DNA of 64,000 nucleotides from Basidiobolus meristosporus CBS 931.73 (GCA_002104905.1 MCFE01000479.1:1-64000); one strand, 5' to 3'. Positions 50,290 through 64,000 are shown, counted from the first letter of the stretch. A program made the numbers and translations. Notes: a model not told the origin generated them from the sequence alone.

Positions 50290-51039
50290 ATGAATGTCCA
50301 ACCTCAACTGTATCCTTCATATAAGATGACGCACCCAAACTCGGGCATCAATATGGGCATGGGCCTAGCTGGTGGGATCAGGGCAGTGGGAAGAGCCACC
50401 CCTCCATGTTTGGCAAAATCCAACATCGTCGATTCTGAAAGAGAAATCAAACGTCGCAACCGGCTCAACCCACAACAGGTCAGCCGATTGATCCAAGTGT
50501 TTAGACAAACCACGAAGCCGAGGACTGAGGTGCGACGAAATCTTGCCAAAGAGCTCGGAATGCACCACCGTGCTGTTCAGATCTGGTTCCAAAACCGTCG
50601 CCAAAAGCTGAAGAAACAACTTCAGCAGGCATCCGCCATCAATTCAAGCCAGCTTCTGAAGGGATGTATACTTGACCCTAATGGTGTATTACAGAGTTCG
50701 TTGGATGTTCTCTCCTTCAATTGCTTCGAAGACAGCTTTGCATTTCGCACTCAGAATCACACCGACTTCCATCGATCGCCACCACCATCATCATCACCCC
50801 CCTCCTCGTTCCCTTCAAGCGATCGGTCGTCCATCTCACCCCTACTTGAGAGTCCTGATAGCGATGGTTTGCATATGTTGATAAACCCTTCAGGTGATTG
50901 TTTGGAGTATAATCCAGTGGGGAGCTTGGAAGGTAATGAAGCTCGGCAAAGTAAAGAGATGCTTTCCAGCGCTAATCCATTTAACGATATACAGCCCTGT
51001 GCGAAACAATCGCCTTTGCCAAGCCAGAGTACAACCTAG
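50290..51039 (+). CDS. Homeodomain transcription factor, 249 aa
   Basis: KRRNRLNPQQ...LAKELGM..RAVQIWFQNRRQK (Q50 homeodomain) followed by a Ser/Pro-rich tail. Confidence 0.92.
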   Translation: MNVQPQLYPSYKMTHPNSGINMGMGLAGGIRAVGRATPPCLAKSNIVDSEREIKRRNRLNPQQVSRLIQVFRQTTKPRTEVRRNLAKELGMHHRAVQIWFQNRRQKLKKQLQQASAINSSQLLKGCILDPNGVLQSSLDVLSFNCFEDSFAFRTQNHTDFHRSPPPSSSPPSSFPSSDRSSISPLLESPDSDGLHMLINPSGDCLEYNPVGSLEGNEARQSKEMLSSANPFNDIQPCAKQSPLPSQSTT

Positions 51040-52913
51040 AATGCGGTTCACTAGGCGCTATTGAATCTGACGCCCTCCAATGGTCAGTACCAGTTGAATC
51101 TCAACAGCCGGACTACTTGATATCCAGCGAACATTCAAGGATGAACCCTACGTTCCAGGTGAAGAAAGCTGAGGTGCCCATTGGCTACGACAGCCTCGTT
51201 GAATCTGGTGGAGCCTACCTTCAAGTCCCAGAGCCTTTACTGACGAGAGTAGGCACGCTAGCAGCTCATAATGCTCCGAAAAAGCAGGTCTCTCCCAACA
51301 TATTCTTTCCAGGGGAACCCCAAGCACAAATTTATACCATAGACCCCACATCCTATGGTATATCCACTGTCAACCACACGAAGTTTAGCCTTAATCCTGG
51401 TAGATTCACTAACTTCGACTCAACTTCAGTTCAATAGTGATGTCCAGAGGTGGGGCTAGTTCAGCTCATGAAAATGCAAACGCAAATGTGGTTCGTTCCT
51501 TCTGCGGTATGCTCAACAAGACACACTAAACATGTAGAATTCTCACTTCATAAACCATACATTCATCATCGGAATCTGATCTGCAGTTGCGGATTTGCGT
51601 CGAACTCGCCGGTATTACCGGTGTAGTATGCTTTCGTGTGTTTGCATACCATATAGCCTATATGCTGCTAGTTCGTTTATTCCAAACCCCTGGTATATCT
51701 CAGTTCATTGAGGATTCTTCAATGTTCAATTCTATAGTGTCCAAACTATAATAAACCTAGCTCAACCGATAGCTACGTGCTACATGCATCAAGCACATTG
51801 AGAATCGCTCTCTATCATTAGGTCCATACACAAACACCCGTGATAACGAGCTTGGTGGTTGCTGCCATCCATTTGACCAATAAAAGCGACGTACAAGGGG
51901 CGTATACAGTTGATCGTATGCATCGGAGATGTTGCAAATTATGCATCATGTAGTCGCCCCACTGCTGATTAGTAACCAGTTCAATGTTCATTAGTTAAGG
52001 TGTGATGCTTACCTCCCTAAACCAAAAGAAAATGCCTGTTGTGACTATTTCTATTGAACCTGCATAGTCAACTAAAATCGGATGCCGTTTGATGGTACTA
52101 TTGACAGCACCGATAAACAGTTTTTGCTACGCTCGGTGTGAGGTTCTACTCGGAAGCAGCGATGTCTGTCGCACTGTTGCATTCGATGGAAATTTCAATC
52201 TTCGGTAATGATTGTTCTAGGTCGAGTCTTTGAGCAGGCGGGGATCTATCAGAGTGATAGCTGTGCTGCAGTCCACGATCAGCCCAAAACCTGATCTATC
52301 AGAGTTACACTGAAATCACCATTCTTGAATATGAGCTAAATTTAGGATACGTGTAGGGGCTGGGAAGAATCAGGATGGGGATTTTCCATAGCTCGTTAAA
52401 GTATCGAATCGGGTGTTCCCTTCAAACTGGACAGCAGAGTCAGACGGGCTACGCTACAAACGAACACTGTTCTTGGAAGTCGATAGGATCTATGTGTGCT
52501 GTGCAGTACTGAGGACATCCGCTAGCCTCATCTCAGGTGTCTATTCTACCCAACTGAGGACTCGACAGCCAGACATAGTTCTGATCCAGCAAGTTCACCG
52601 TTATGCTGGTTATGGAATTAAGCACACATTGTATTTATGCAAAATATGGTTGCAACAAGGTTTCGCCATGGAAATCTCAGAGCGAACAGGTTTTGAGGTG
52701 CCAACGTATTTGCCGATTAATAATAGAATACCGTGAACTGGTTTTTTCCCAGTTTATGATGGAATAGAAGCGCAAGAGAAGCTTTGGAATGGTTAGTGGT
52801 GTAACATAATAAATAAGGGAAATATGGTTCACCAGAGATAAAATCAAATCCTTTTAATAGCGAGCAAATGGCCAGTGCCAAATTTTGCAGTGTTAGCTTG
52901 CACTGAGTTTGTC

Positions 52914-53850
52914 ATGTCTGCCTATTCCTACATCTCTATTTCAACCGCTGGCGAAGATGGTGTAGAGCCTACTTTCATTTATCTATCCGCAAGTTTCAAC
53001 GAAGTGATTGGTCACGCAGATGAAGAAATGGTTAACAAGAAAGTGAAATTTGTTTTTCCAAACAAGTCTTTCTGGTACTCCTCTTTACGTTGCTTATCAG
53101 ACCTTCAGGCGTTCGGCACCATTTTGTACAATAATATCAAAACCGAATACGGCGATATTCTTTTGCAAACAGTTATGTTTTGTTGCGAAGGAAAGCATAT
53201 ATGCATCAATAGAAGACTTGGCGAAGAAGATTTCGCAGAAGGATTCTTGCTGGGTAGGCTTTTTCAGAGACTGCCTTCTTTCCTTTTGGCTAAATTTCCC
53301 TTATCCAAGAAAGCACTTGTATGGCAGAGTCTATTGTATGTGTCGACCATGAAGATATCTACATTGGGGTATGAATTACATTACATATTTGAGCGCATTC
53401 TTGGCATTTCTAACCGCTTTCCATCCCAAGACTCAGGAAGGTATGCTCAGTATAAAAGGTGAAATTTATCAAGCCATCGCTGCCTCAATTCCCCCATTCC
53501 CGATCAATCAACAACGCATCGGGTTCATACTTAATCATTTTTCCGAGCACTGTCCCATCAGCTACTGTGTTGGGGACCCGGAGAAAACACTGGGGATATG
53601 CAGAAAAAGCCTCCTTGGAACTTCGTTCTACAGTTACGTTGAGAGTAGTGAGCTCGACATGGTAGAGGAAGAAATAAGAAACATGAAAATCGGGAAATTC
53701 CGCACGTTAGTCACCCAAATCGAATTCACTTTTCTTTCTCCAAAAGGAAATCTGGATATCAATGCAGGCATTTGCTATTCCAGTGATGGGATCGTAGTAG
53801 TTTTAATGTTGCTCGATCCTTTTGAGTTTTTCTTAGACAAGGCTCTTTAA
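52914..53850 (+). CDS. Tandem-PAS-domain protein without an output domain (intron boundaries around 53250-53430 uncertain)
   Basis: PAS-like block 1 is FIYLSASFNEVIGH..EEMV. Block 2 is FILNHF...ISYCVGDPEKTLG....LLGTSFYSYV...SSDGIVVVL. Confidence 0.7.
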
Positions 53851-54112
53851 TCGGACTTCACTCAGTTATCGCTTTGTATATTTCTGTACATACCTTCGAC
53901 CCTTTCCTAATTGTCTCTTATTAGAGCATTTCGCAGAGATCGGAGGTTCTTGTAAATAACTAATCACTTGGGTATAGCAACCATAAACGCACAAAACATA
54001 TATCTTGGTGTTGATATGAGACAGCTCACAGCATTCTCAGTTTATTACATTGCCATAAGTTTCGGTCTTCGTTACGTGGTCCTGATGGTTTATGCCATGG
54101 GGTGTATGCACA

Positions 54113-57100
54113 CTAATTGTGCATGAGAGAGGGGTGCTGCTCACGAAGACTTGTTGCAAGCTTCAAGAAGTGTTGACTCAAGTCCACTTCGTTTATGGCA
54201 TTATGGAAGCCGCAGGGGACCTGGGCATTGTCCTGCATATCCAAAACATTCTTCAGCTTGTTGGATCGAATGGATGCATTGTACTGCGCTTGGGCGATGT
54301 TGGCCATCTCCTTCAGAGACGAGCTGTAGGTGGTAACGGGTGAAAATAAAATGGAATAGAATCCTGTTGGGTATCTGGAGCATGTTTAGCCACAGGAACT
54401 GTGGAAGCATTGGAGTCATTGTAAATTACCCTAGCGATGCGAGCTTCTCAAAGAGATCGGAATAGTATTCCCTTCTAATCTGACATTCTCCATCAGAGAG
54501 GAAGATTATGGTAGGCAACCTAGTATAAGGTTTGTAAGTTCCACAAATGCACTTGAGGTATGTTTTTTGATCTAGCGCCTTACATCCTGGGATCCCAGTG
54601 GGTTTGGATCAATTCGCTTGCTGTTTTCATTGCGCTATCGTAGTTGGTTCCCGCAGGCCTTAATCTTTCACTTAGAAGGCGTTCAATCACTTCTTGCGCA
54701 TTCAATGTTGTGTCATGATTGAGCTGGATCTGAGATACACTGCTAAATAGCACGATTGATATGGCATCCCGGCCATCTGTTCCCTCGGACCACGTGGCTT
54801 GCCGAGATTGAAGAAATCGAAAGGTGGCGTCAAGTACGGCACCAAACCTATTGTTGAACGCTCCTACCAGGCGATTATACAATGGGGATCCGAATAAGGG
54901 CCCAAAATCACCGACAAACATCGAGCTGGACATATCCAAGCACAGCACAATATGATACCTGGCTTTTTCGGATACAGGGTTGGCGCAGTCGAAATGATGG
55001 CCATCAACTACAAGTGGCAGAGAAAATTGAGCACGATGGCTGAGATGGGGAAAAGCCAAATGTACCTGAAACATATCCTCTTCCCAAGGGACCAAGGTTT
55101 GCTGGATCCATAGGAGAATGGAACATACGAAGTGTGCAGTACGATCTACTAGAGTCCTGAGCTTTATGCTTTTCATCGGGACAATAGGCATCACAGCGTG
55201 CGAATAATTCTTGTTTTTCTTTGCCATACGGGTCTGTAGGAAGAGAAAGAATTGTGTTATTGAGTGTCGGCATAGCCTCAACAAGATTCAATACCTTTGA
55301 ACCCAGTTCGATCCCAGAAAAGTTTGTGCGTTATAAAATCTTTTGGGCGTTCAGGGTGTGGCTTAAGTTGCCCAAGAATATGCTTGCGTTCTTTGTCTAT
55401 ACTCTTCACAGCGTGTGTGGCGCCGATTTCGCAATACTCTATATGGGCGTGTGGCCCAAATTCCTGGCAATACTTTACAATGATTGAGCTTAGATGGCAC
55501 GCAGGTAGATGCAGTTTTTACTTACCATATTACACAGAAAGCATGAGCCACTGTCGCCAACGTTGAATGTATGAGATCGTAGTTCGAATTCGTCATCTAC
55601 CGCTGAGAATCTCGTGTTCACCATGTTCCCATGTCTAGTCTCATGTAGCTTTTGCGGATGACCAACTGGAAGTGTGCAAAAGTATTCGCAGTTGGGACAC
55701 TGAAAACAGTTATAAGTTGCAGGGCTCTCCCTCGAGGGGTACTTCTGGGTAAGCTTACCTTCTTTTGGCAGTAGTGGAAGGGATTGCTATCGGCGGAATG
55801 TTGATGGCTTCCTGGATGTGTGTACTTGCCACTGGGGATTTTTATACAACACCGCAACTTGTGAGCAATTTGAGTGTACTATAATAGATCAAACGTCAGT
55901 TTAGGAGCGTGGAAGCATGAAGCCTATTGACATACCTTTGTGTACATAAAACTGCCATGCTTGTTGGAGTACATCTCCTCAGCGATCTGAGGCTCGAGTT
56001 TGATCTCACAAATCCCTTCTGCCTCGCACAGTTTGGAACATGAATGCTCGTTGCTGGTAGTTCAAATATGAGTCACTACGAATCGATAAACTCTACTTCC
56101 TGACTTACCCGCAAAAATGATGCGCATCATCCGTTAATGCGTGGAAATGATCTCGACTCTTACAAGTAAGATTGCACCCTAACGGGCAAGAAATGGGGCA
56201 CGCTGACTGATTCTCGCATTTATGAATATCATGCGGTGTTTCAGAGGGAATGACGCAGAGATTGTTGCAGTTGAACACGGACGAATCGTGTTGTACTATG
56301 CCTTGCAGCGAACAAGGCTGTCCAGAAACGTTAGCAAGAAGTTGAGTACAGAGTAAGGAAGTGACTTACCTCCCCGCAGAAATGAACGCTTGACTGACAC
56401 AAATGCTCGTTACCATCGTGGTTTGCAGGCCTTGCACAGGTTTTTAAGCAATTTCTCTTGCTGTGTAGAGCGCAGGGTGCACCACATAAATGGATTGAAG
56501 TATCACATACGTGAGCTTCATCATGCCCCGCACGAAGTCCACAGAGTACCTCACTGACAAGTAGCTCTGACTCGTGCTGATCTGAAAATGAACAACCGTG
56601 GTGACATTCATGATCAGTACAACAGTCATGGTCCTCGTCGTGAAATTTGTTCAGAAGGCAGCGCAAGCTGCATTGGGAACATGTCAAACCACAAATCTCC
56701 CATCTTCTTTCGAACTTGGATATGCTTTCACTGAAATTATGCTGCAGTGCAGATATATCGCTGTTATCCGGAGGAAACCTATCGATATTCTGGTTGATCC
56801 AGGTGCTGATACGTTCGCGTCGCCTTGTCACCAGCCGTTGTATCAAAGTGGCGAATACCTCGAACCACTCCATATCTGATTTTGGCCATTTCTGTCGATC
56901 AAAGATGTTGTCGTTGACCCAATCACGAATGGGTTGACTCATCCCTTTGAATGGCTCTTCTGAGCTCAATACTAAACCCGAGTCGCAAGGCAATTCCACT
57001 TGAAGCACGCTGCCGTCCTTGCTTAAGCTGTGCTCAAAGATTTCGACCTCTTCGCCCAAGATAGTACCATCATCATAGTTCTGTAGATGCTGTTAGCCTG

Positions 57101-60100
57101 GAGGCAAGCAAACTATGGAGGTCAAGTTGACCACAAACCTTCAATGGTTCACTGAATGGGCTCAGCTCTTCTGTTCCAGTGGCAATCGCATGGTCTAAAA
57201 ATGCAGCAAGGCTCTTGGTTCGGATTTGGATAATATTGTTGTCCAAAGATGACCAGTCACAAATTTTCATCTTGCACATGAGAACCTAGGGTATTTCATG
57301 ATAAACTATAAGCACCGAGAGTATCAATGATTATGCTACATAGCCTCACCTTGATATTTTGCAGAAATTGCCGTGCGTTGTTGTGAGTAATTTTTTGCTG
57401 ACTTAACATCTGACCGATACTGTTGAATGTGGTGTAAAACTGGGGATCGTTGAATATGGGCCATGGCAATATGCTGAGCCGGGATCCATGCAGCTTTGTG
57501 ATGAAATTATCTTCTCCTTCTTTCGAGACGATCTGAGAAAACTTGGACTGGAACTCGCGTACAATTTCTGAACGGTCGCTAGCAGGAACATCTCTGATTA
57601 CAATGACCATGTGGGAGTGAAATAGCGACGGGTTTTGGGCAGGATCGAATATGGTGGCTCCCGATTGGAACCTTTGGAAAAGATCATGAATATCCCTGCC
57701 AATAGCAAAATCATTCTTGAATAGAATCATGTTCGAGATGGCTGCATTGAACAGGTTCATCAACACATCTTCTTGGGGTGTTCTTTCGATTGATTTCAGT
57801 CCCTCGAAATCCAAAAGAACGCAGAGGTATGGCCCATTTTGATCCTTGGTTGGGGTGAGAGATAGCCAAATGCCCTCAGTACATCTGGTGGCTGCACCAG
57901 CAAATGAAGAGTCCGCTAAATGGTTAAGTAGAAAGCTTTTCCCAAGTGACTGGCTTCCCATGGAACTTACAACCTTGACCGGATAGTCGCAGTAATACGA
58001 GAAAATCGATTCGTACCAGCCTAATGTACAGTTGGCTGTTAGCGTAGGAATGTCGCCACCTACCAACTGGTCATCGAAACTGTGGCAAGAAACCCCGTCT
58101 TTCAGAGGGACGAACTGATTATCCTTCGCAATTGCTATTTGGATAGGTAGAAGACAGCCAAGTTGAATTAGCCACTTGCCACAGTAGTATTGGTTAAACC
58201 AACTTTCAGGCAGATTTTTGAGGTCAACAGTTTTCATGTTGACGATCTCTACGCTGAATTCATTTTTCAGCTTATTCATTGGTTTTCTGGTATCGCTGTC
58301 CAGGCTTTGTATCTGTCTGTTCATGTAGTTTTTGAAGAATTCCTCATAGTCGTATTGTCCTCGATTGTTCGGTCTGTGTTGAGTGTTTGTGCCGATTCTC
58401 AGGACCTGATTAATTTTCTGCGCTACAAGTCCACTCTCCTGCTCGATAAAGCTGTTCACTGGGTAGCGTTCCCACATAGCCTTGTAGCAGTCAAGAAGAT
58501 CATTGACCTTCGATGGGGCTTCATAGTGGTATATGTTGAACGTTTGGAGTTTCTCGAGCGATATCCACGTGTGCTCACTTACAAACGAAGCTCGTAAAAG
58601 AGTATCTGAGAAGATTTCCTCAATTTTCAGTCGATTCCCAACGAATATTATATAGCCATTCGGTTGCATATTGCTGGTGAACATCGTATCTTCGCCATGT
58701 ACTGAAATGCCGTTTTCCAAGCCTTCGTCAAAGGCGAGAGATATCTTCCCGCTAAACGTCCTGGTCGCAAGTTTCTCCCTGAACTGCCATTTGTTTCTTT
58801 CGAGAGTGATACCCACATACGCCGAAGTGAAAATGGATTGTTCCACATTGAAGCCAATAATATGGATCTGATGCCCTCCCACCATCGATGCTGATATCGA
58901 CTCCAGCGAATTGAAGTTGGGAGGCAGCTGGATTTTGCGTACTTTCTCGCTTTGGCCAAAATCACCCCAAAACCACACGTAGACCATTAATTTGCCTATT
59001 TCTTTCGAGTCGCAGCTTTGATCCTCATGGGTAGCAGATTCATCATTGGCATCAGTTAGCATAGTCAAGTCCTCCTTCGTACAACCCCTCCTGGTTGGCT
59101 CGAATTCTTCCAAAAATGCCAGCAGGCAAGATCCATCTGAAGTCGATACGACACGAACAGCGTTGCTGGGAATCATCATGGAATTCGGTAGGATTTGATG
59201 TTGAATCATGCTGTAAATGCGCGCCTTTCCACTGCGCTCGATAAAGCATAGCTCTTCGCTTCCAGTGGGAAATAGCAAATGAGTAATGTCTGGGATTTGA
59301 TAATCATACCAGGCCTTGATCTGAATGTCGTTGTATCGGCTGCTAAGGGTTCCGGATGCCTCATCGAATATGTAAATATTTGCCTAATGGTGAAGTTAGG
59401 GTTTCCGCCGAGTTTTCCCCAAAGTAGTGCATTTAGAAATTCGCATACGTACCTTCGCATTGGATTTATCGTAGATTGCAACCAGCTGGCTGGCCTCGTT
59501 AATGGCTATCATCACATGATCCGGGTGTATGTGAAATTTCTTGAGCAGCCTATCTTCTTTGATATTACTTCCTATGGTTGAAGCTGCGGCATAGTACACC
59601 TTCAGAGTGGATTCTGTATACGACGCGATGAATGCGAGGTATTTCCCGTTATTTGTCTGGTAGATGCATCTATAGGGATATGCCTGGTTAGCGGAGCAGA
59701 TGGCAGGGCTCGCCGATTTCGAGTTCACTCACTTGAGACATTCCTCTTTGTAGGGCAGCTCAATGTAACTTAGCGTTTTCTTAGACGAGTTGCCCTCGAA
59801 CTGAGGAATCAGGACCTTCTCATTGCCTTGCTCTAATTCTCGAATATCTGATGCCTGGACATAGGTTAGATGAAGGTAGTAGCGAAGAATGTCCGGCTGC
59901 TTAGTTTCTACAGAGTAAGCAATGCTCTGGCGGTGTTGGTATATATCAAATCGCTTAAGTTTAAATTCGCGATCGTTGCTGGAAAAATGCTCTATCAACC
60001 GGCCAATGGAGTCGTCCACATACTCATGCTCTAGTTGGGTAAGAGCAGATAGCGATTCAGCCTCTAATTTTCGGATCTGGCGTTGCATCATCGTTTTCAG

Positions 60101-62691
60101 ATCCTCTACGACCTCATCAACTATTTCCTGGCAATATTCGGTCAATATATCGTTGAACAGCTTCATAAACGCCTCCATCACGTTGGATTCCACAGCATCC
60201 TCATCGACATTCATGGCCCAAGCGTTCAAGAGCAGAGCAATAAAGTCGGCATCGGGCATGTTGCGTGCTTTGCCCTTATTAGTGGGTTGTTTTTTGCCAT
60301 GCTTGAAAATGTGGATCAAGCCTTGCGATAGTTGTGAGACCCAGTCTGTGATCCCTTTGGAGGAGGAATCCTTCTTTATAATGTTTAGAATTATATTGCT
60401 GAACGGTTCAGTATCCTGTTCTTTGTAGACGTCGTATGCCAAGATATATTCCTTCTTTTGCTTTCTCCACTTTGGATGCCTGATATTTCGGAGTTTTTTC
60501 TCAATGCTGGCGACAATAGAGGTATCTTGCCCCAGCAGAACTATATTTTTAGGCATCGGGTTAGTGTTGTGGTGTGGCTCTAGTATAGATCGATTAGGGA
60601 AGTTACATTGGGATGATTCGTGGAATGAGGCCTCCTGGAGGTCAAGCGGTTCGGGGCTGTTAATTGGACTGTCAGTGGTGAGTTCACAGGCAGCTTCCGT
60701 GTTTGGCGCATATTCCTCGTCATTAGTCTTTTGATCGCTCATATTGATATCAGGAAAATCAATATTTTCGGCCGAATCATCTGCGCTTGAGTTGGCTTCC
60801 ACGATATCTCTGTCATCATTGATGGCAATAGGGAAATCCTCTAGAGGGTTGAAGTATTGATACCATGCACTTGGAGAGGATTTACATGTCAGTAGAGTGA
60901 TGAATGGCTAAATCCTAGCTGCACTTACGGATATATACTACGTAAGAGATGGTTGGTTACCACTTCCGCATGACCCCTTGTAGAGTTCAGCAATTCTCTG
61001 CACTTATGGTTGGTTTCCTCTCTCTGGGCATTTCCATCCTGTTCTACTTGAGTGATTTTCGCTTTATGCTTCTCAGTTAGGTCGCTTATGGGGTTTTCAG
61101 GTAATCCGGTGCAACATTCGACAAATGACTTGCGTTCTTGGTAGCTTAGAGACGAATCTATTGCCAAGCGATATCTCTCTCCGACCAGTTTCTGATATAG
61201 GAATCCTGGAACCTTTTCCTTGTTAAAGAGAGTTGTATTATGATTGTTCTCGACAATCTTTGATGCAATGAATTCACAAGTGATAAAACCCTGCTTTGTC
61301 TCCGAATCCACCACTCGTGGCGACAAATGCTGCTGAATGCCATCCGGGATTAATGTTGACGGATCAACCGGTGTTGAATAATTCTTTACTGGGATCTAAG
61401 GTAAATTGCTCAATGCTTGCGCTCAAAGGCAAGAAAGTATAAGTCATAGTCACCATAAATCCAGTAGATACTTGAAAATCCTCTTTCTGTTCTTGAGTTT
61501 TCTTCACTTCGAAGGTGAAGCATGTATCGAAGGTTTGGTGTTCTTGCCCAGATTCGAAATCGAAGTTATCTAGATCATCCTCAGATAATAGGCAGAGCTG
61601 TTGTTCGGTAAGTTTACACAAGTATCTAAGCAACAGTAATGTCAGTGATGATTATTAGACCCTAGATTGATCATCCAGTACCTATGAAACACAATACAGT
61701 TTTTCTTGGTGTGGCTCGTAGCCTTGTCGCTGTAACATTGTGGCTCAGGCCAATGTATAACAAATCCTCGTAAATCGCTTGAAGAGTTGTCAAGTAAGAG
61801 GTATAATCCTGAGCGAAGCCCCTTATCTTGGTTGTTGTTGGTATTGAAACCGTCATATTCATAAGTGAGGTCACCATCAGGTAACAGTAATGACGATTCC
61901 GCTTCCGTGACTGCACCCAGATTCGTGATAAACTTCCTGAGTGTTGGCCGATTCCCGTAAACTCCAAGCAACTGTATTGTCCTGCGATCAAGCGAACGGT
62001 AATTGACATGAGTAAGCTCAGCATAACTACCTGCTACGATCCTGTTGCACAGGTTCTCAAGGCAATCTTGAGCCATTATAACTTTGTCCACTGTTTCAGT
62101 TTAAGTGATTCAATACTGTGTAAGAGAAATACCCATTTTTTGAGATAACCTACCAAGCCCGCCACTGCCAACATCCTTATACAGGTCAAGAAGTCGATAC
62201 ATTCCTGAGATTTTCGATACAGCGTCCCAAGGGTGTAGTTCATTGTTGAACAGGTTATCTTCTGCCACGTCCCCACCTTCACTAGCGTAGTCATTAAATG
62301 TGTCAAATATTGAAAACAACTCTTCGCCGGCTGAAGTCTGCCCTGCTTCAGTTTCCTTTCCTGGTCGGCTTTCCATATCTAACCTGTCATCCACATCATG
62401 TCGTCTGCCGACGACTACTTCTGCATCTTGAGGACTAGCTTGGTTGACTGAGTTCGAAGCTGATAAATATTTAGTGTTTTCATCAGATTCGATTAGGTCA
62501 GAGTCTTGCATATTCTGTTGGTGTTGATAACTGACATCAGCGAGGTAAATGTCACTATCTGAATGGTTGCCAGCCGCTATCGCCGAGGAAGCAAATTGGC
62601 CTGCATCGTTATGCACTGGTTCAGGTGGCTCGTGATTGAAGCTACCCTCATCATTTTCGAGCCAAACTATATATTTTTGATGAGTATTCAT
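54113..62691 (-). CDS. Very large (~2,500 aa, ~18 exons) VLIG/GBP-type GTPase with Cys/His-rich repeats and a C-terminal VWA domain
   Basis: G1 GSQSLGKSFLLN, G2 RCTEGIW, G3 DFEGL and G4-like VIRD. Repeated C-x3-C...H..H.C units. VWA MIDAS DMSSS, GTNY and FLSDG. Exons join in frame through GT-AG introns, except one ambiguous junction near 60.85-60.94 kb. The start codon is uncertain. Confidence 0.85.
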
Positions 62692-64000
62692 CTGCAAGGT
62701 TCATATTACTCCAGAAAGGATTTACCATACTGATTAGCAGACTCTTCAATATCATTCACGACTTCACAGTCAAGGAAACTACTAGAATCCGAGATACTTT
62801 CGATATCTCCATTTTCTGACGGTAAATAAGACATACAAACTTGAAGAGAGGAGCCTATGTTAAGAAACATTGCCGAACGATTGTGGACCTTTATAGAAAA
62901 CATCTTCTGAAGCTTATTGGAACGATTGCGGCCAAATCAATTCATTGGTACATCATAGCAATGCCCTTTGCCTTCTCTTACACTACGTGTGCTGATCTTA
63001 GCTTTAGAGATCATTGATCTGTTTCTCCTAAATCCGGACTGTTTCTTGCTATCAGCACCAAGTGTAAAACTACATCGGATGTGATTTGAGCGGCATAGAG
63101 TAGAGATGGTTCACTAATTGAGACAGATGCCACGTAACATCGCAGCGATTATGGATGTGCTCAATCCCTTGTTGTTTGATGTGGCGCAATCCATATCTCT
63201 TGGCAGATTCTACTCCGCAATGAAAATGGGTATAGCTAGAGGATTGAATTTACAGAATGGTGAGCTAAAGCTCAATGGTGCAGTCTGGTATTACTGCGTG
63301 GGATTATAACCCATGATGACGGTTCAGGGACAAGTCAGCTTTTAGGGTTAGGCTAAGCCTGTGAAATGTGTTTGAAGCGGCTATCTATTTCGAGTCAAGT
63401 CGATCATTTTATGTAGGTTAGGGCACCAACAACATGTTTCTTATTGAAGGAAACTCCCTCTAACGCTGTAAATGTGCTGGGCGCCAACACTAGAGGCCCA
63501 TCTGATTCCACAGCCACTATGACTCGGATTACCTGGGGAAAGAACTGGCTATTGTCTCTCTAGTACGGATACCACTTGATGTTGAAAATGCTATTACTCA
63601 TACACTCATGCATAAACGGTCATATCCTACTACAAGACCTCCAATCGCATGAACAATTATCATATTTACATTTTGATCATGCTAGTGGTGTGGACAATTG
63701 TTGAGCTTCCTGTCATATATTATGTAGCTGGACTAGGCATTGGGTGAAGCTTGGTTGGCAGATTTGGATTTCCTGCATTGATGTTTCAGGTGAAAATAGC
63801 ATAAATCATGATTAAAGTTATGTTGGAGGTTTGAGGCTCAACATTAAACCATTTCCCTTATCATGAATGTATGCCACGCACATTGATCTGTCAGTGTTGA
63901 TATGATTGATTGAAGTTGCTGAGAGCAAAAATTATCATTCGACTCTCATAATTGTCATGATCAGTGTCCATCTGGATGCAAACAACATTCAGGTAATATC

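What the first reader, a model, noticed from the sequence alone, without database searches (positions are those of the whole stretch)
54113..62691. Giant GTPase-Zn-repeat-VWA gene: candidate fungal cell-autonomous immunity or allorecognition machine
Seen: manual splicing gives one continuous ORF of about 2,500 aa. In order it has an acidic N-terminus, a conserved block (GLVDKVIMAQDCLENLCN), a beta-rich region, a GB1/RHD3-clade GTPase (GSQSLGKS, RCTEG, DFEG, RD), a helical region, roughly 450 aa of Cys/His repeats (e.g. CGLTCSQCSLRCLLNKFHDEDHDC, CPNCEYFCTLPVGHPQKLH) and a VWA domain with an intact MIDAS. Known: the G motifs resemble animal interferon-inducible very large GTPases (GVIN1/URGCP) and GBPs. 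The Cys/His units recall NFX1-type zinc fingers. Inference: this is a sensor-effector protein that binds foreign or damaged targets and oligomerises on GTP. I know of no functional characterisation in fungi.
Basis: partly seen in the sequence, partly recalled or inferred. Interest (0 to 1): 0.8.

Follow-up and report, generated by a model that had tools for sequence, protein, structure and literature searches.

The report
Giant GBP/VLIG-like GTPase with zinc array and VWA
This is a real 2,552-residue gene of the fungus Basidiobolus meristosporus; it belongs to an unstudied family of giant GTPases, found in many eukaryote groups and not only fungi, that combines a GBP/VLIG-like motor domain with a unique zinc-binding array and a metal-dependent adhesion (VWA) domain.

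Summary
Window 62834-54113 (minus strand) carries one 19-exon gene. Its exons match the deposited protein K493DRAFT_306093 of Basidiobolus meristosporus CBS 931.73 (2,552 aa, "VWFA domain-containing protein") at 100%.

The GTPase motifs G1-G4 and the MIDAS residues are invariant in 35-36 relatives. The ~440-aa Cys/His array has 58 invariant Cys/His. It has no Pfam match (zf-NF-X1 included) and no structural match. The G domain lies between GBP, RHD3/Sey1 and URGCP/VLIG; of the solved families, GBPs are closest.

New findings:
- The conserved N-terminal domain is predicted to adopt a P-loop-less GBP/atlastin-like fold. That gives a two-LG-like layout like the one predicted for human GVIN1.
- The family is not fungus-specific. 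It occurs in a red alga, a malawimonad, oomycetes, a foraminifer and a dinoflagellate, and some members carry SAM or B-box/RING N-termini.
- The fungal tree follows the species tree, duplications are modest, and selection is purifying.

An immune role remains possible but untested. Allorecognition is not supported. The same stretch was noted once before in this scan (s1-222213).

The parts
54113..62834 (-). Whole gene: 19 exons, 2,552 codons plus stop (annotated K493DRAFT_306093 = P0207)
   Evidence: Exact exon-by-exon mapping of P0207 to the window. The collinear orthologue P0064 matches from 62076 to 54116.
62251..62834 (-). Variable acidic N-terminus (aa 1-175; 40 D/E against 6 K/R), including annotated exon 1 (62834-62727) and intron 1
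   Evidence: Low occupancy and identity in the family alignment; composition; sequence and splice sites.
61532..62214 (-). Conserved N-domain core (aa 188-375): alpha/beta fold resembling a GBP/atlastin large-GTPase domain, but without a Walker A motif; holds GLVDKVIMAQDCLENLCN and the invariant G-x-Y-G
   Evidence: AF2 model with pLDDT about 90 over residues 13-190. Foldseek top hits are atlastin-1, GBP1/2/5 and RNF112. VIA gives Z 7.2 for GBP1, 6.8 for ATL1, and 6.3 for RNF112, GBP2 and Sey1. Alignment shown.
60515..60862 (-). Second acidic, poorly conserved linker (aa 560-675)
59750..60514 (-). Helical region (aa 676-930)
   Evidence: Family alignment. No Pfam match apart from a chance-level hit.
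58508..59749 (-). Beta-rich, probably beta-propeller-like region (aa 930-1300); the fastest-diverging part between paralogues
   Evidence: Weak WD40/propeller Pfam hits. The nearest language-model clusters are DCAF17, VID27 and RIC1 propellers, which is a lead only. Paralogue identity by region.
57154..58507 (-). Conserved pre-G segment plus GBP/RHD3/VLIG-type G domain (aa 1301-1730); G1 at 57935-57958, G2 at 57872-57886, G3 at 57800-57811, G4 at 57590-57598
   Evidence: Pfam; PDB profile searches; invariant motifs.
56706..57153 (-). Helical region after the G domain (aa 1731-1860)
   Evidence: Family alignment.
54991..56705 (-). Cys/His array (aa 1861-2300): 41 Cys and 41 His, of which 58 positions are invariant across 35 relatives; family-specific
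54116..54990 (-). VWA domain with complete MIDAS (D2319-x-S-x-S at 54922-54936, T2415, D2445)
   Evidence: Pfam VWA_2; MIDAS residues invariant in 36/36; PDB profile hits to the CLCA1 and ITIH4 VWA domains.

Best explanation
Shown: this is one real gene. It encodes a soluble 2,552-aa member of an ancient, uncharacterised eukaryotic family of giant dynamin-superfamily GTPases with a fixed domain order. The order is: variable acidic or adaptor N-terminus; a P-loop-less fold resembling a large-GTPase domain; an acidic linker; a helical plus beta-propeller-like region; a G domain with all catalytic motifs, placed between GBP, RHD3/Sey1 and URGCP/VLIG; a short helical region; a ~440-aa zinc-type Cys/His array found only in this family; and a C-terminal VWA domain with a complete MIDAS. 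Inferred mechanism: as in GBPs, atlastins, RNF112 and, by prediction, GVIN1, GTP binding drives pairing of G domains, and hence dimerisation or higher assembly with a conformational stroke. The MIDAS site clamps an acidic residue of a partner, or of the protein's own acidic linkers as an autoinhibitory pseudo-ligand. The rigid Cys/His array links the motor to the clamp. The faster-evolving middle region and the exchangeable N-terminus would set target or adaptor specificity. Most likely biological role (weakly supported): a non-essential GVIN/GBP-like assembly machine for surveillance or defence, rather than a housekeeping membrane fusogen.
For: Gene and family. Collinear core of about 1,150 aa at 38-45% identity across fungal phyla, and 30-33% in Galdieria, Gefionella and unidentified eukaryotes. 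G1-G4 and MIDAS invariant. G-domain affinities: Pfam GBP, RHD3 and URGCP each hit 33-34 of 35 members; PDB profile E-values are GBP5 4.7e-10, GBP1/2 about 5e-9 and Sey1 1.5e-7, with atlastin not detected. N-domain fold. The GVIN1 preprint predicts an N-terminal domain, flexible linker, LG domain, helical linker, second LG domain and C-terminal domain, with dimers formed through the LG domains. RNF112 shows G-domain dimerisation in an ATL/GBP-like GTPase that carries a RING. No transmembrane segment. Variable N-terminal modules (SAM; three B-boxes plus RING). Tandem or clustered paralogues. Fastest divergence in the middle region.
Against: No experiment and no expression data; no RNA run was listed. 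The N-domain match is only middling (Z about 7, Foldseek E about 1e-2), and profile-profile comparison with the true G domain found nothing. No outgroup phylogeny with GVIN1/URGCP could be made. The strong conservation, species-tree-like phylogeny and purifying selection fit a conserved cellular task as well as defence. No effector domain was found. The ligand of the MIDAS site is unknown.
Confidence: 0.55

Rival explanations
1. One reading: a fungal cell-autonomous immunity or allorecognition sensor-effector that binds foreign or damaged targets and oligomerises on GTP.
For: GBP/VLIG-like G domain. Human GVIN1 now has a reported antibacterial coat function. Tandem or clustered duplicates occur in Glomeromycotina, Boletales and Russulales. 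The family has a patchy distribution, with no Ascomycota among the hits. The middle region and the N-terminal modules are variable.
Against: The gene is a single syntenic copy in Basidiobolus. The tree follows the species tree with only 2-5 copies per genome. dN/dS is 0.22 overall and never exceeds 0.6 in any window. No death, nuclease, lipase or pore domain was found. The family is not fungus-specific. No induction data exist.
Confidence: 0.25
2. A GTP-regulated ubiquitin-system scaffold or E3 ligase, RNF112- or TRIM-like, in which the Cys/His array and/or added RING modules carry ligase activity and the VWA domain binds substrate.
For: Non-fungal members carry three B-boxes and a C3HC4 RING ahead of the same core. 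RNF112 sets a precedent for a RING joined to an ATL/GBP-like G domain. The Cys/His array is large and invariant.
Against: The window protein has no RING, B-box, AN1 or CHY pattern and no Pfam zinc-finger hit. In RNF112 the ligase and GTPase activities are independent. The Cys/His model matches no solved ligase fold.
Confidence: 0.12
3. A housekeeping membrane tether or fusogen of the Sey1/atlastin kind.
For: The RHD3_GTPase profile hits, and one Tulasnella member exceeds its cut-off (45.7 against 42.4 bits). Sey1 is detected by the profile. The core is deeply conserved.
Against: There is no hydrophobic segment (best 19-residue Kyte-Doolittle mean 1.45). The window protein is below the RHD3 cut-off (32-34 against 42.4 bits). 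GBPs score better than Sey1 with the broad profile, and atlastin is not detected. The family is absent from the Ascomycota hits, whereas Sey1 is universal in fungi (established knowledge). The architecture is entirely different.
Confidence: 0.05
4. A gene-model artefact: two or more neighbouring genes merged by manual splicing.
For: No RNA evidence could be obtained for this locus. The 5' end is ambiguous.
Against: Independent annotations in dozens of species give the same 2,000-2,600-aa architecture. Transcriptome ORFs in Gefionella, and an intron-less 2,491-aa ORF in a metagenome contig, span the G and VWA domains. There are no in-frame gaps, and all 18 introns are canonical.
Confidence: 0.03

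Closest known systems
Vertebrate very large inducible GTPases (GVIN1/VLIG-1) and URGCP
   Same: Giant size, with the G domain in the middle of the protein. The Pfam URGCP_GTPase profile hits 33 of 35 members (best E 2.7e-12). Sources label several relatives 'VLIG-type G domain'. GVIN1 is predicted to have two LG domains separated by a flexible linker and a helical linker. Here a degenerate LG-like fold, an acidic linker and a helical region precede the active G domain.
   Different: All members score below the URGCP cut-off (31-39 against 55 bits). The first LG-like fold here has no P-loop. A Cys/His array and a VWA domain are not reported for GVIN1. There is no interferon system in these organisms. 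Common ancestry was not tested, because no VLIG sequence could be fetched.
Guanylate-binding proteins (GBP1-5)
   Same: They are the nearest solved family by profile (GBP5 4.7e-10). Pfam GBP scores above its cut-off. The G1, G2 and G3 motifs and an (R/K)D-type G4 are present.
   Different: Only the first ~80-120 residues of the G domain align. There is no GBP C-terminal helical domain and no CaaX box. The protein is four times larger and has unrelated flanking domains.
Sey1p/RHD3 and atlastins
   Same: The same GB1/RHD3-type G-domain superfamily. Sey1 is detected at 1.5e-7 to 3.9e-7. The N-domain model superposes on atlastin-1.
   Different: No membrane anchor. Below the RHD3 cut-off. Atlastin is not detected by sequence. 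The family has a patchy distribution rather than a universal one.
RNF112 (ZNF179)
   Same: A zinc-binding module fused to an ATL/GBP-like G domain that dimerises in the transition state. It is among the structural hits of the N-domain. Non-fungal family members carry a RING.
   Different: RNF112 is about 630 aa, membrane-anchored and animal-specific. The window protein has no RING.
Midasin/Rea1 (and MoxR-VWA pairs)
   Same: By analogy only: a large NTPase motor combined with acidic linkers and a C-terminal MIDAS domain that grips a partner.
   Different: That motor is an AAA+ ATPase, not a GTPase, and there is no homology outside the VWA fold (midasin E 0.09).

Membership tests
Dynamin superfamily, GB1/RHD3-type G domain | G1 GxxxxGKS, G2 Thr, G3 DxxG, G4 (R/K)D | tested here: met
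   GSQSLGKS, RCTEG, DFEG and IRD are present. All four motifs are invariant or nearly so in 35 relatives.
GBP (PF02263) | Score above the Pfam gathering cut-off across the GBP N-terminal domain | tested here: inconclusive
   Scores of 29.3-30.9 bits exceed the 21.1 cut-off, but only profile positions 18-95 of 264 align.
GBP | C-terminal helical GBP domain and, in many members, a CaaX lipid anchor | tested here: not met
   No PF02841 hit. The C-terminus is ...SLMHN.
RHD3/Sey1 (PF05879) | Score above the gathering cut-off (42.4 bits) | tested here: not met
   The window protein scores 32.6-34.2 bits. One Tulasnella relative reaches 45.7.
RHD3/Sey1/atlastin | C-terminal transmembrane hairpin | tested here: not met
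   The highest 19-residue hydropathy mean is 1.45, and it lies inside globular domains.
VLIG/URGCP (PF25683) | Score above the gathering cut-off (55 bits) | tested here: not met
   The window protein scores 30.8-31.8 bits. The best score in the family is about 39 bits, in Gefionella.
VLIG/GVIN1 | Two large-GTPase domains in one giant chain (as predicted for human GVIN1) | tested here: inconclusive
   The N-domain model resembles GBP/ATL G domains at Z 6.3-7.2 and Foldseek E about 1e-2. It lacks Walker A, and hhalign against the true G domain finds nothing.
VLIG/GVIN1 | G domain groups with animal VLIGs in a phylogeny | not tested
   Reference sequences could not be fetched. The broad search returned only family members.
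VWA domain with MIDAS | Pfam VWA above cut-off, and DxSxS...T...D present | tested here: met
   VWA_2 scores 31.7 against 27 on the exon alone, and 46.9 in the orthologue. D2319, S2321, S2323, T2415 and D2445 are invariant in 36/36.
NFX1-type zinc finger | Pfam zf-NF-X1 hit, or the pattern C-x(1-6)-H-x-C-x3-C(H/C)-x(3-4)-(H/C)-x(1-10)-C (pattern recalled from memory) | tested here: not met
   No Pfam hit in any of 35 members at E<=1. The full pattern has no match. Only the first half, C-x(2-4)-H-x-C-x3-C, occurs, four times.
RING / B-box / AN1 / CHY zinc fingers | Consensus Cys/His spacing or a Pfam hit | tested here: not met
   No pattern match in P0207 and no Pfam hit. RING and B-box do occur in non-fungal relatives.
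Fungal NLR-like (STAND) immune receptors | NACHT or NB-ARC NTPase with an N-terminal effector and C-terminal repeats | tested here: not met
   There is no NACHT, NB-ARC, HET, HeLo or TIR hit in any exon or in full-length relatives.

The most novel reading that the evidence does not exclude
This family is the non-animal counterpart, and possibly the ancestor-like form, of the vertebrate GVIN/VLIG giant GTPases. On this reading it is a machine as old as the last eukaryotic common ancestor, with two LG-type folds (the first now degenerate), that assembles on GTP and grips targets through a zinc array plus a MIDAS-VWA. It would be kept as a dispensable cell-autonomous defence or surveillance coat in fungi, oomycetes, red algae, Rhizaria, dinoflagellates and malawimonads, with lineage-specific adaptor heads (SAM, B-box/RING).
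Probability: 0.2. Interest if true: 0.85.

Novelty: new variant of a known kind. Interest (0 to 1): 0.62.

Why it matters
Interferon-inducible large GTPases (GBPs, and now GVIN1) are central executioners of cell-autonomous immunity in vertebrates, but the origin of the giant VLIG class is unknown. A conserved, pan-eukaryotic giant GTPase family with a comparable layout and two extra conserved modules (a 58-ligand Cys/His array with no known fold, and a MIDAS-VWA) gives a concrete, testable candidate for that origin. It also opens a new branch of the dynamin superfamily to study in tractable microbes such as Phytophthora, Serendipita, Rhizoctonia and Galdieria. Even if the role turns out not to be immune, a ~290-kDa GTPase-MIDAS machine kept intact across many eukaryote groups without any known function is a clear gap.

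Tried and rejected
- RNA evidence: the look-up of sequencing runs listed no run, so read laying was not used and the exon chain and 5' end rest on annotation and homology.
- Language-model atlas search with the GTPase exon gave no usable hit.
- Cys/His array: PDB sequence searches with the exon and with the family profile found only chance hits. Pfam found nothing. Foldseek, VIA-wide and the ESM Atlas found nothing outside the family itself. RING, B-box, AN1 and CHY patterns gave no match.
- N-domain against the true G domain by hhalign: no signal.
- Short metagenome 'proteins' that looked like stand-alone G domains (P0045-P0062) proved to be exon fragments of intron-bearing eukaryotic genes. 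This gives no evidence for prokaryotic relatives.
- I tried to fetch GBP, atlastin, Sey1 and URGCP sequences for an outgroup tree with a 540-aa pan-eukaryotic profile at E<=10. Only family members came back, so no outgroup phylogeny was made.
- P0192 is not on record for a contig look-up.
- A search for positive selection in a young paralogue pair found none.
- I considered and rejected a Sey1 orthologue, an NLR-type receptor and a merged gene model (see rivals and membership tests).


Full report

**1. The observation**

Stop-to-stop scanning of the minus strand shows a chain of open segments from about 62.8 kb down to 54.1 kb. Short GT..AG introns with fungal-type donors (GTAAGT, GTGAGT, GTATGT) link them.

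Exon-wise Pfam gives a large-GTPase signal in the 695-aa exon 57299-59383: GBP 29.3 bits (cut-off 21.1), RHD3_GTPase 32.6 and URGCP_GTPase 30.8. It gives VWA_2 at 31.7 bits (cut-off 27) in 54583-55287.

An exhaustive HMMER search with the GTPase exon found 1,020 relatives. The best was a 2,363-aa Basidiobolus ranarum protein at 76% identity. A search with that protein returned P0207, 'hypothetical protein K493DRAFT_306093 [Basidiobolus meristosporus CBS 931.73]', 2,552 aa, named by UniRef 'VWFA domain-containing protein'. P0207 maps with exact matches onto 19 exons of the window, 62834..54116, with the stop at 54113-54115.

All quoted motifs sit at verified coordinates.

The only discrepancy is the start. 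The annotation begins at ATG 62834 and removes a 59-nt GT..AG intron. Further in-frame ATGs lie upstream. The B. ranarum contig ends 222 nt before its annotated start, so it cannot decide the question.

**2. One gene or several**

- Independently annotated relatives keep 560-820 residues between P-loop and VWA.
- Full-length relatives from Endogone, Auriscalpium and a chytrid have the same layout.
- Transcriptome-derived ORFs of Gefionella, and an intron-less 2,491-aa ORF on a metagenome contig, span both domains.

A merged model is very unlikely.

**3. Anatomy (P0207 numbering)**

| Residues | Region |
|---|---|
| 1-175 | acidic, variable (40 D/E against 6 K/R) |
| 176-560 | conserved N-domain |
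| 560-675 | second acidic linker |
| 676-930 | helical |
| 930-1300 | beta-rich |
| 1300-1470 | conserved pre-G segment |
| 1470-1730 | G domain |
| 1730-1860 | helical |
| 1861-2300 | Cys/His array |
| 2301-2552 | VWA |

There is no hydrophobic segment that could span a membrane.

*G domain.*
- G1-G4 are invariant or nearly so in 35 relatives.
- Pfam GBP, RHD3_GTPase and URGCP_GTPase each hit 33-34 of 35 members, with best E-values of 2e-7, 3.9e-10 and 2.7e-12.
- With the fungal profile, GBP2 and Sey1 tie in the PDB at 3.9e-7.
- With a pan-eukaryotic profile, GBP5 (4.7e-10) and GBP1/2 (about 5e-9) lead Sey1 (1.5e-7), and atlastin is not found.

The domain belongs to the GB1/RHD3-type clade, is not a Sey1 or atlastin orthologue, and is at least as close to GBPs. 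Its relation to VLIGs could not be tested by a tree.

*VWA.* The MIDAS residues D-x-S-x-S, T and D are invariant in 36/36. The nearest solved VWA domains are those of CLCA1 and ITIH4.

*Cys/His array.*
- It has 41 Cys and 41 His in 446 residues, and 58 positions are invariant plus about nine nearly invariant.
- No Pfam family hits any of 35 members, zf-NF-X1 included.
- The strict NFX1 pattern does not occur. Its first half, C-x(2-4)-H-x-C-x3-C, occurs four times.
- There is no RING, B-box, AN1 or CHY spacing.
- An AF2 model (pLDDT 73; 80-95 over residues 60-290) has little regular secondary structure apart from a long hairpin.
- That model matches nothing: Foldseek best E is 1, VIA best Z is 2.6, and the ESM Atlas returns only the family's own fragments.
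- Caveat: the model is above 400 residues and was not searched domain by domain.

*N-domain.*
- No Pfam or PDB sequence match.
- The AF2 model (pLDDT about 90 for residues 13-190) is an alpha/beta fold.
- Its Foldseek hits are almost all atlastin-1/3, GBP1/2/5 and RNF112 G domains (best E 8e-3, probability 0.90-0.95).
- Its best VIA matches over that part are GBP1 (Z 7.2, 121 residues, rmsd 3.3), atlastin-1 (6.8), RNF112, GBP2 and Sey1 (6.3), and SMG9 (6.1).
- Z of about 7 is not compelling alone, but two methods point to the same superfamily.
- At the strand-loop-helix position where a P-loop would sit, the family keeps an invariant G-x-Y-G (GVYGNRP here, GIYGSKSEI in Agaricomycetes). No member has GxxxxGK[ST] there.
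- hhalign against the real G domain finds nothing.

I read this as a degenerate large-GTPase-like domain, with probability about 0.6-0.65.

*Beta-rich region.* Only weak WD40/propeller leads.

**4. Distribution and evolution**

Full-length fungal members (2,000-2,600 aa) occur in Basidiobolus, Endogone, Glomeromycotina, many Agaricomycetes and the chytrid Phlyctochytrium. No Ascomycota appeared in any list.

Outside fungi, the same collinear core (30-33% identity over about 1,100-1,260 aa, plus weaker N-domain and beta-region matches) is present in the red alga Galdieria, the malawimonad Gefionella and unidentified eukaryotic contigs. The G module is also found in oomycetes (Phytophthora, Pythium, Aphanomyces, and Lagenidium with its VWA), the foraminifer Reticulomyxa and the dinoflagellate Effrenium. 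Several of these are auto-named 'VLIG-type G domain-containing protein'.

N-terminal additions differ between lineages. Gefionella has a SAM domain, and the unidentified eukaryotes have three B-boxes plus a C3HC4 RING.

A tree of 59 fungal C-terminal cores (1,127 columns) recovers Agaricomycetes, Glomeromycotina, Endogone and Basidiobolus as clades, with order-level structure like the species tree. Paralogues arise by genus- or family-level duplication. This was a quick search with LG+G4, and the program gave long-branch warnings.

Copies are often adjacent or clustered, judging by neighbouring locus tags. In Scleroderma, two genes lie convergently 3.7 kb apart and a third lies about 100 kb away.

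In Basidiobolus the gene is a single syntenic orthologue. The downstream 280-aa gene and a homeodomain gene are shared.

Between paralogues the helical and beta region diverges fastest. For the Scleroderma pair, dN/dS is 0.22 overall and 0.01-0.06 in the G domain. It peaks at 0.5-0.6 around residues 376-600. dS varies from 0.01 to 0.77 along the gene, which suggests gene conversion.

**5. Interpretation**

The invariant catalytic and MIDAS residues, kept across very distant eukaryotes, say that both GTP hydrolysis and metal-dependent ligand binding are essential to whatever the protein does.

By analogy with GBPs, atlastins and RNF112 and the GVIN1 prediction, the G domain most likely pairs on GTP. 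The VWA would clamp an acidic residue of a partner, or of the protein's own D/E-rich linkers. The zinc array would act as a rigid connector or binding surface.

Several features fit a GVIN/GBP-like surveillance machine better than a housekeeping fusogen:
- the patchy distribution;
- the local duplications;
- the exchangeable N-terminal adaptor modules;
- the faster-evolving middle region;
- the lack of a membrane anchor.

None of this is evidence of immunity, and the strong purifying selection and species-tree congruence speak against allorecognition. The RING and B-box variants keep a ubiquitin-linked role open.

**6. Literature**

Searches for VLIG, GBP, VWA or NFX1 in fungi, and for dynamin-superfamily evolution, found no description of this family. 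The GVIN1 preprint (10.1101/2025.03.24.645074) and the RNF112 paper (PMC12012479) are the nearest functional references.

**Verdict.** This is a real gene, already annotated, and its function is uncharacterised.

Noticed in passing
window 62668-62903: The start of the gene is ambiguous. In-frame ATGs lie at 62903, 62870 and 62834 (the annotated start).
   Followed up: partly
window 52905-53895 (+) and 50290-51039 (+): The two genes downstream of the giant gene are syntenic with B. ranarum. One is a ~280-aa protein with no Pfam match, the other a homeodomain gene (Homeodomain 56.7 bits).
   Followed up: partly
L001:1-222: The B. ranarum orthologue (K7432_007905) is annotated from an internal Met because the contig ends. 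The preceding exon end (LDLYKDIGSGGL) and part of another intron are visible upstream, so the deposited 2,363-aa protein is truncated at its N-terminus.
   Followed up: yes
L004:10001-28434 and L005:10001-18424: Scleroderma citrinum has two family genes in convergent orientation 3.7 kb apart and a third about 100 kb away on the same contig. Synonymous divergence between two of them swings from 0.01 to 0.77 along the gene, which looks like mosaic gene conversion.
   Followed up: partly
L002:8001-9410, L003:8001-9410: Metagenome 'proteins' of 380-500 aa that hit the G exon are exon fragments of an intron-bearing family gene from an uncultured eukaryote. They are not stand-alone GTPases.
   Followed up: yes
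L006:10001-17476: An intron-less 2,491-aa family member carries three B-boxes and a RING ahead of the conserved core. It sits on a 372-kb contig of an unidentified eukaryote, beside a reverse-transcriptase ORF.
   Followed up: partly
P0207 aa 1865-1888 and 2118-2140 (window 56622-56693 and about 55645-55770): The Cys/His array contains an internal repeat of the unit C-x3-C-x2-C-x3-C-x5-H-x(3-4)-H.
   Followed up: no
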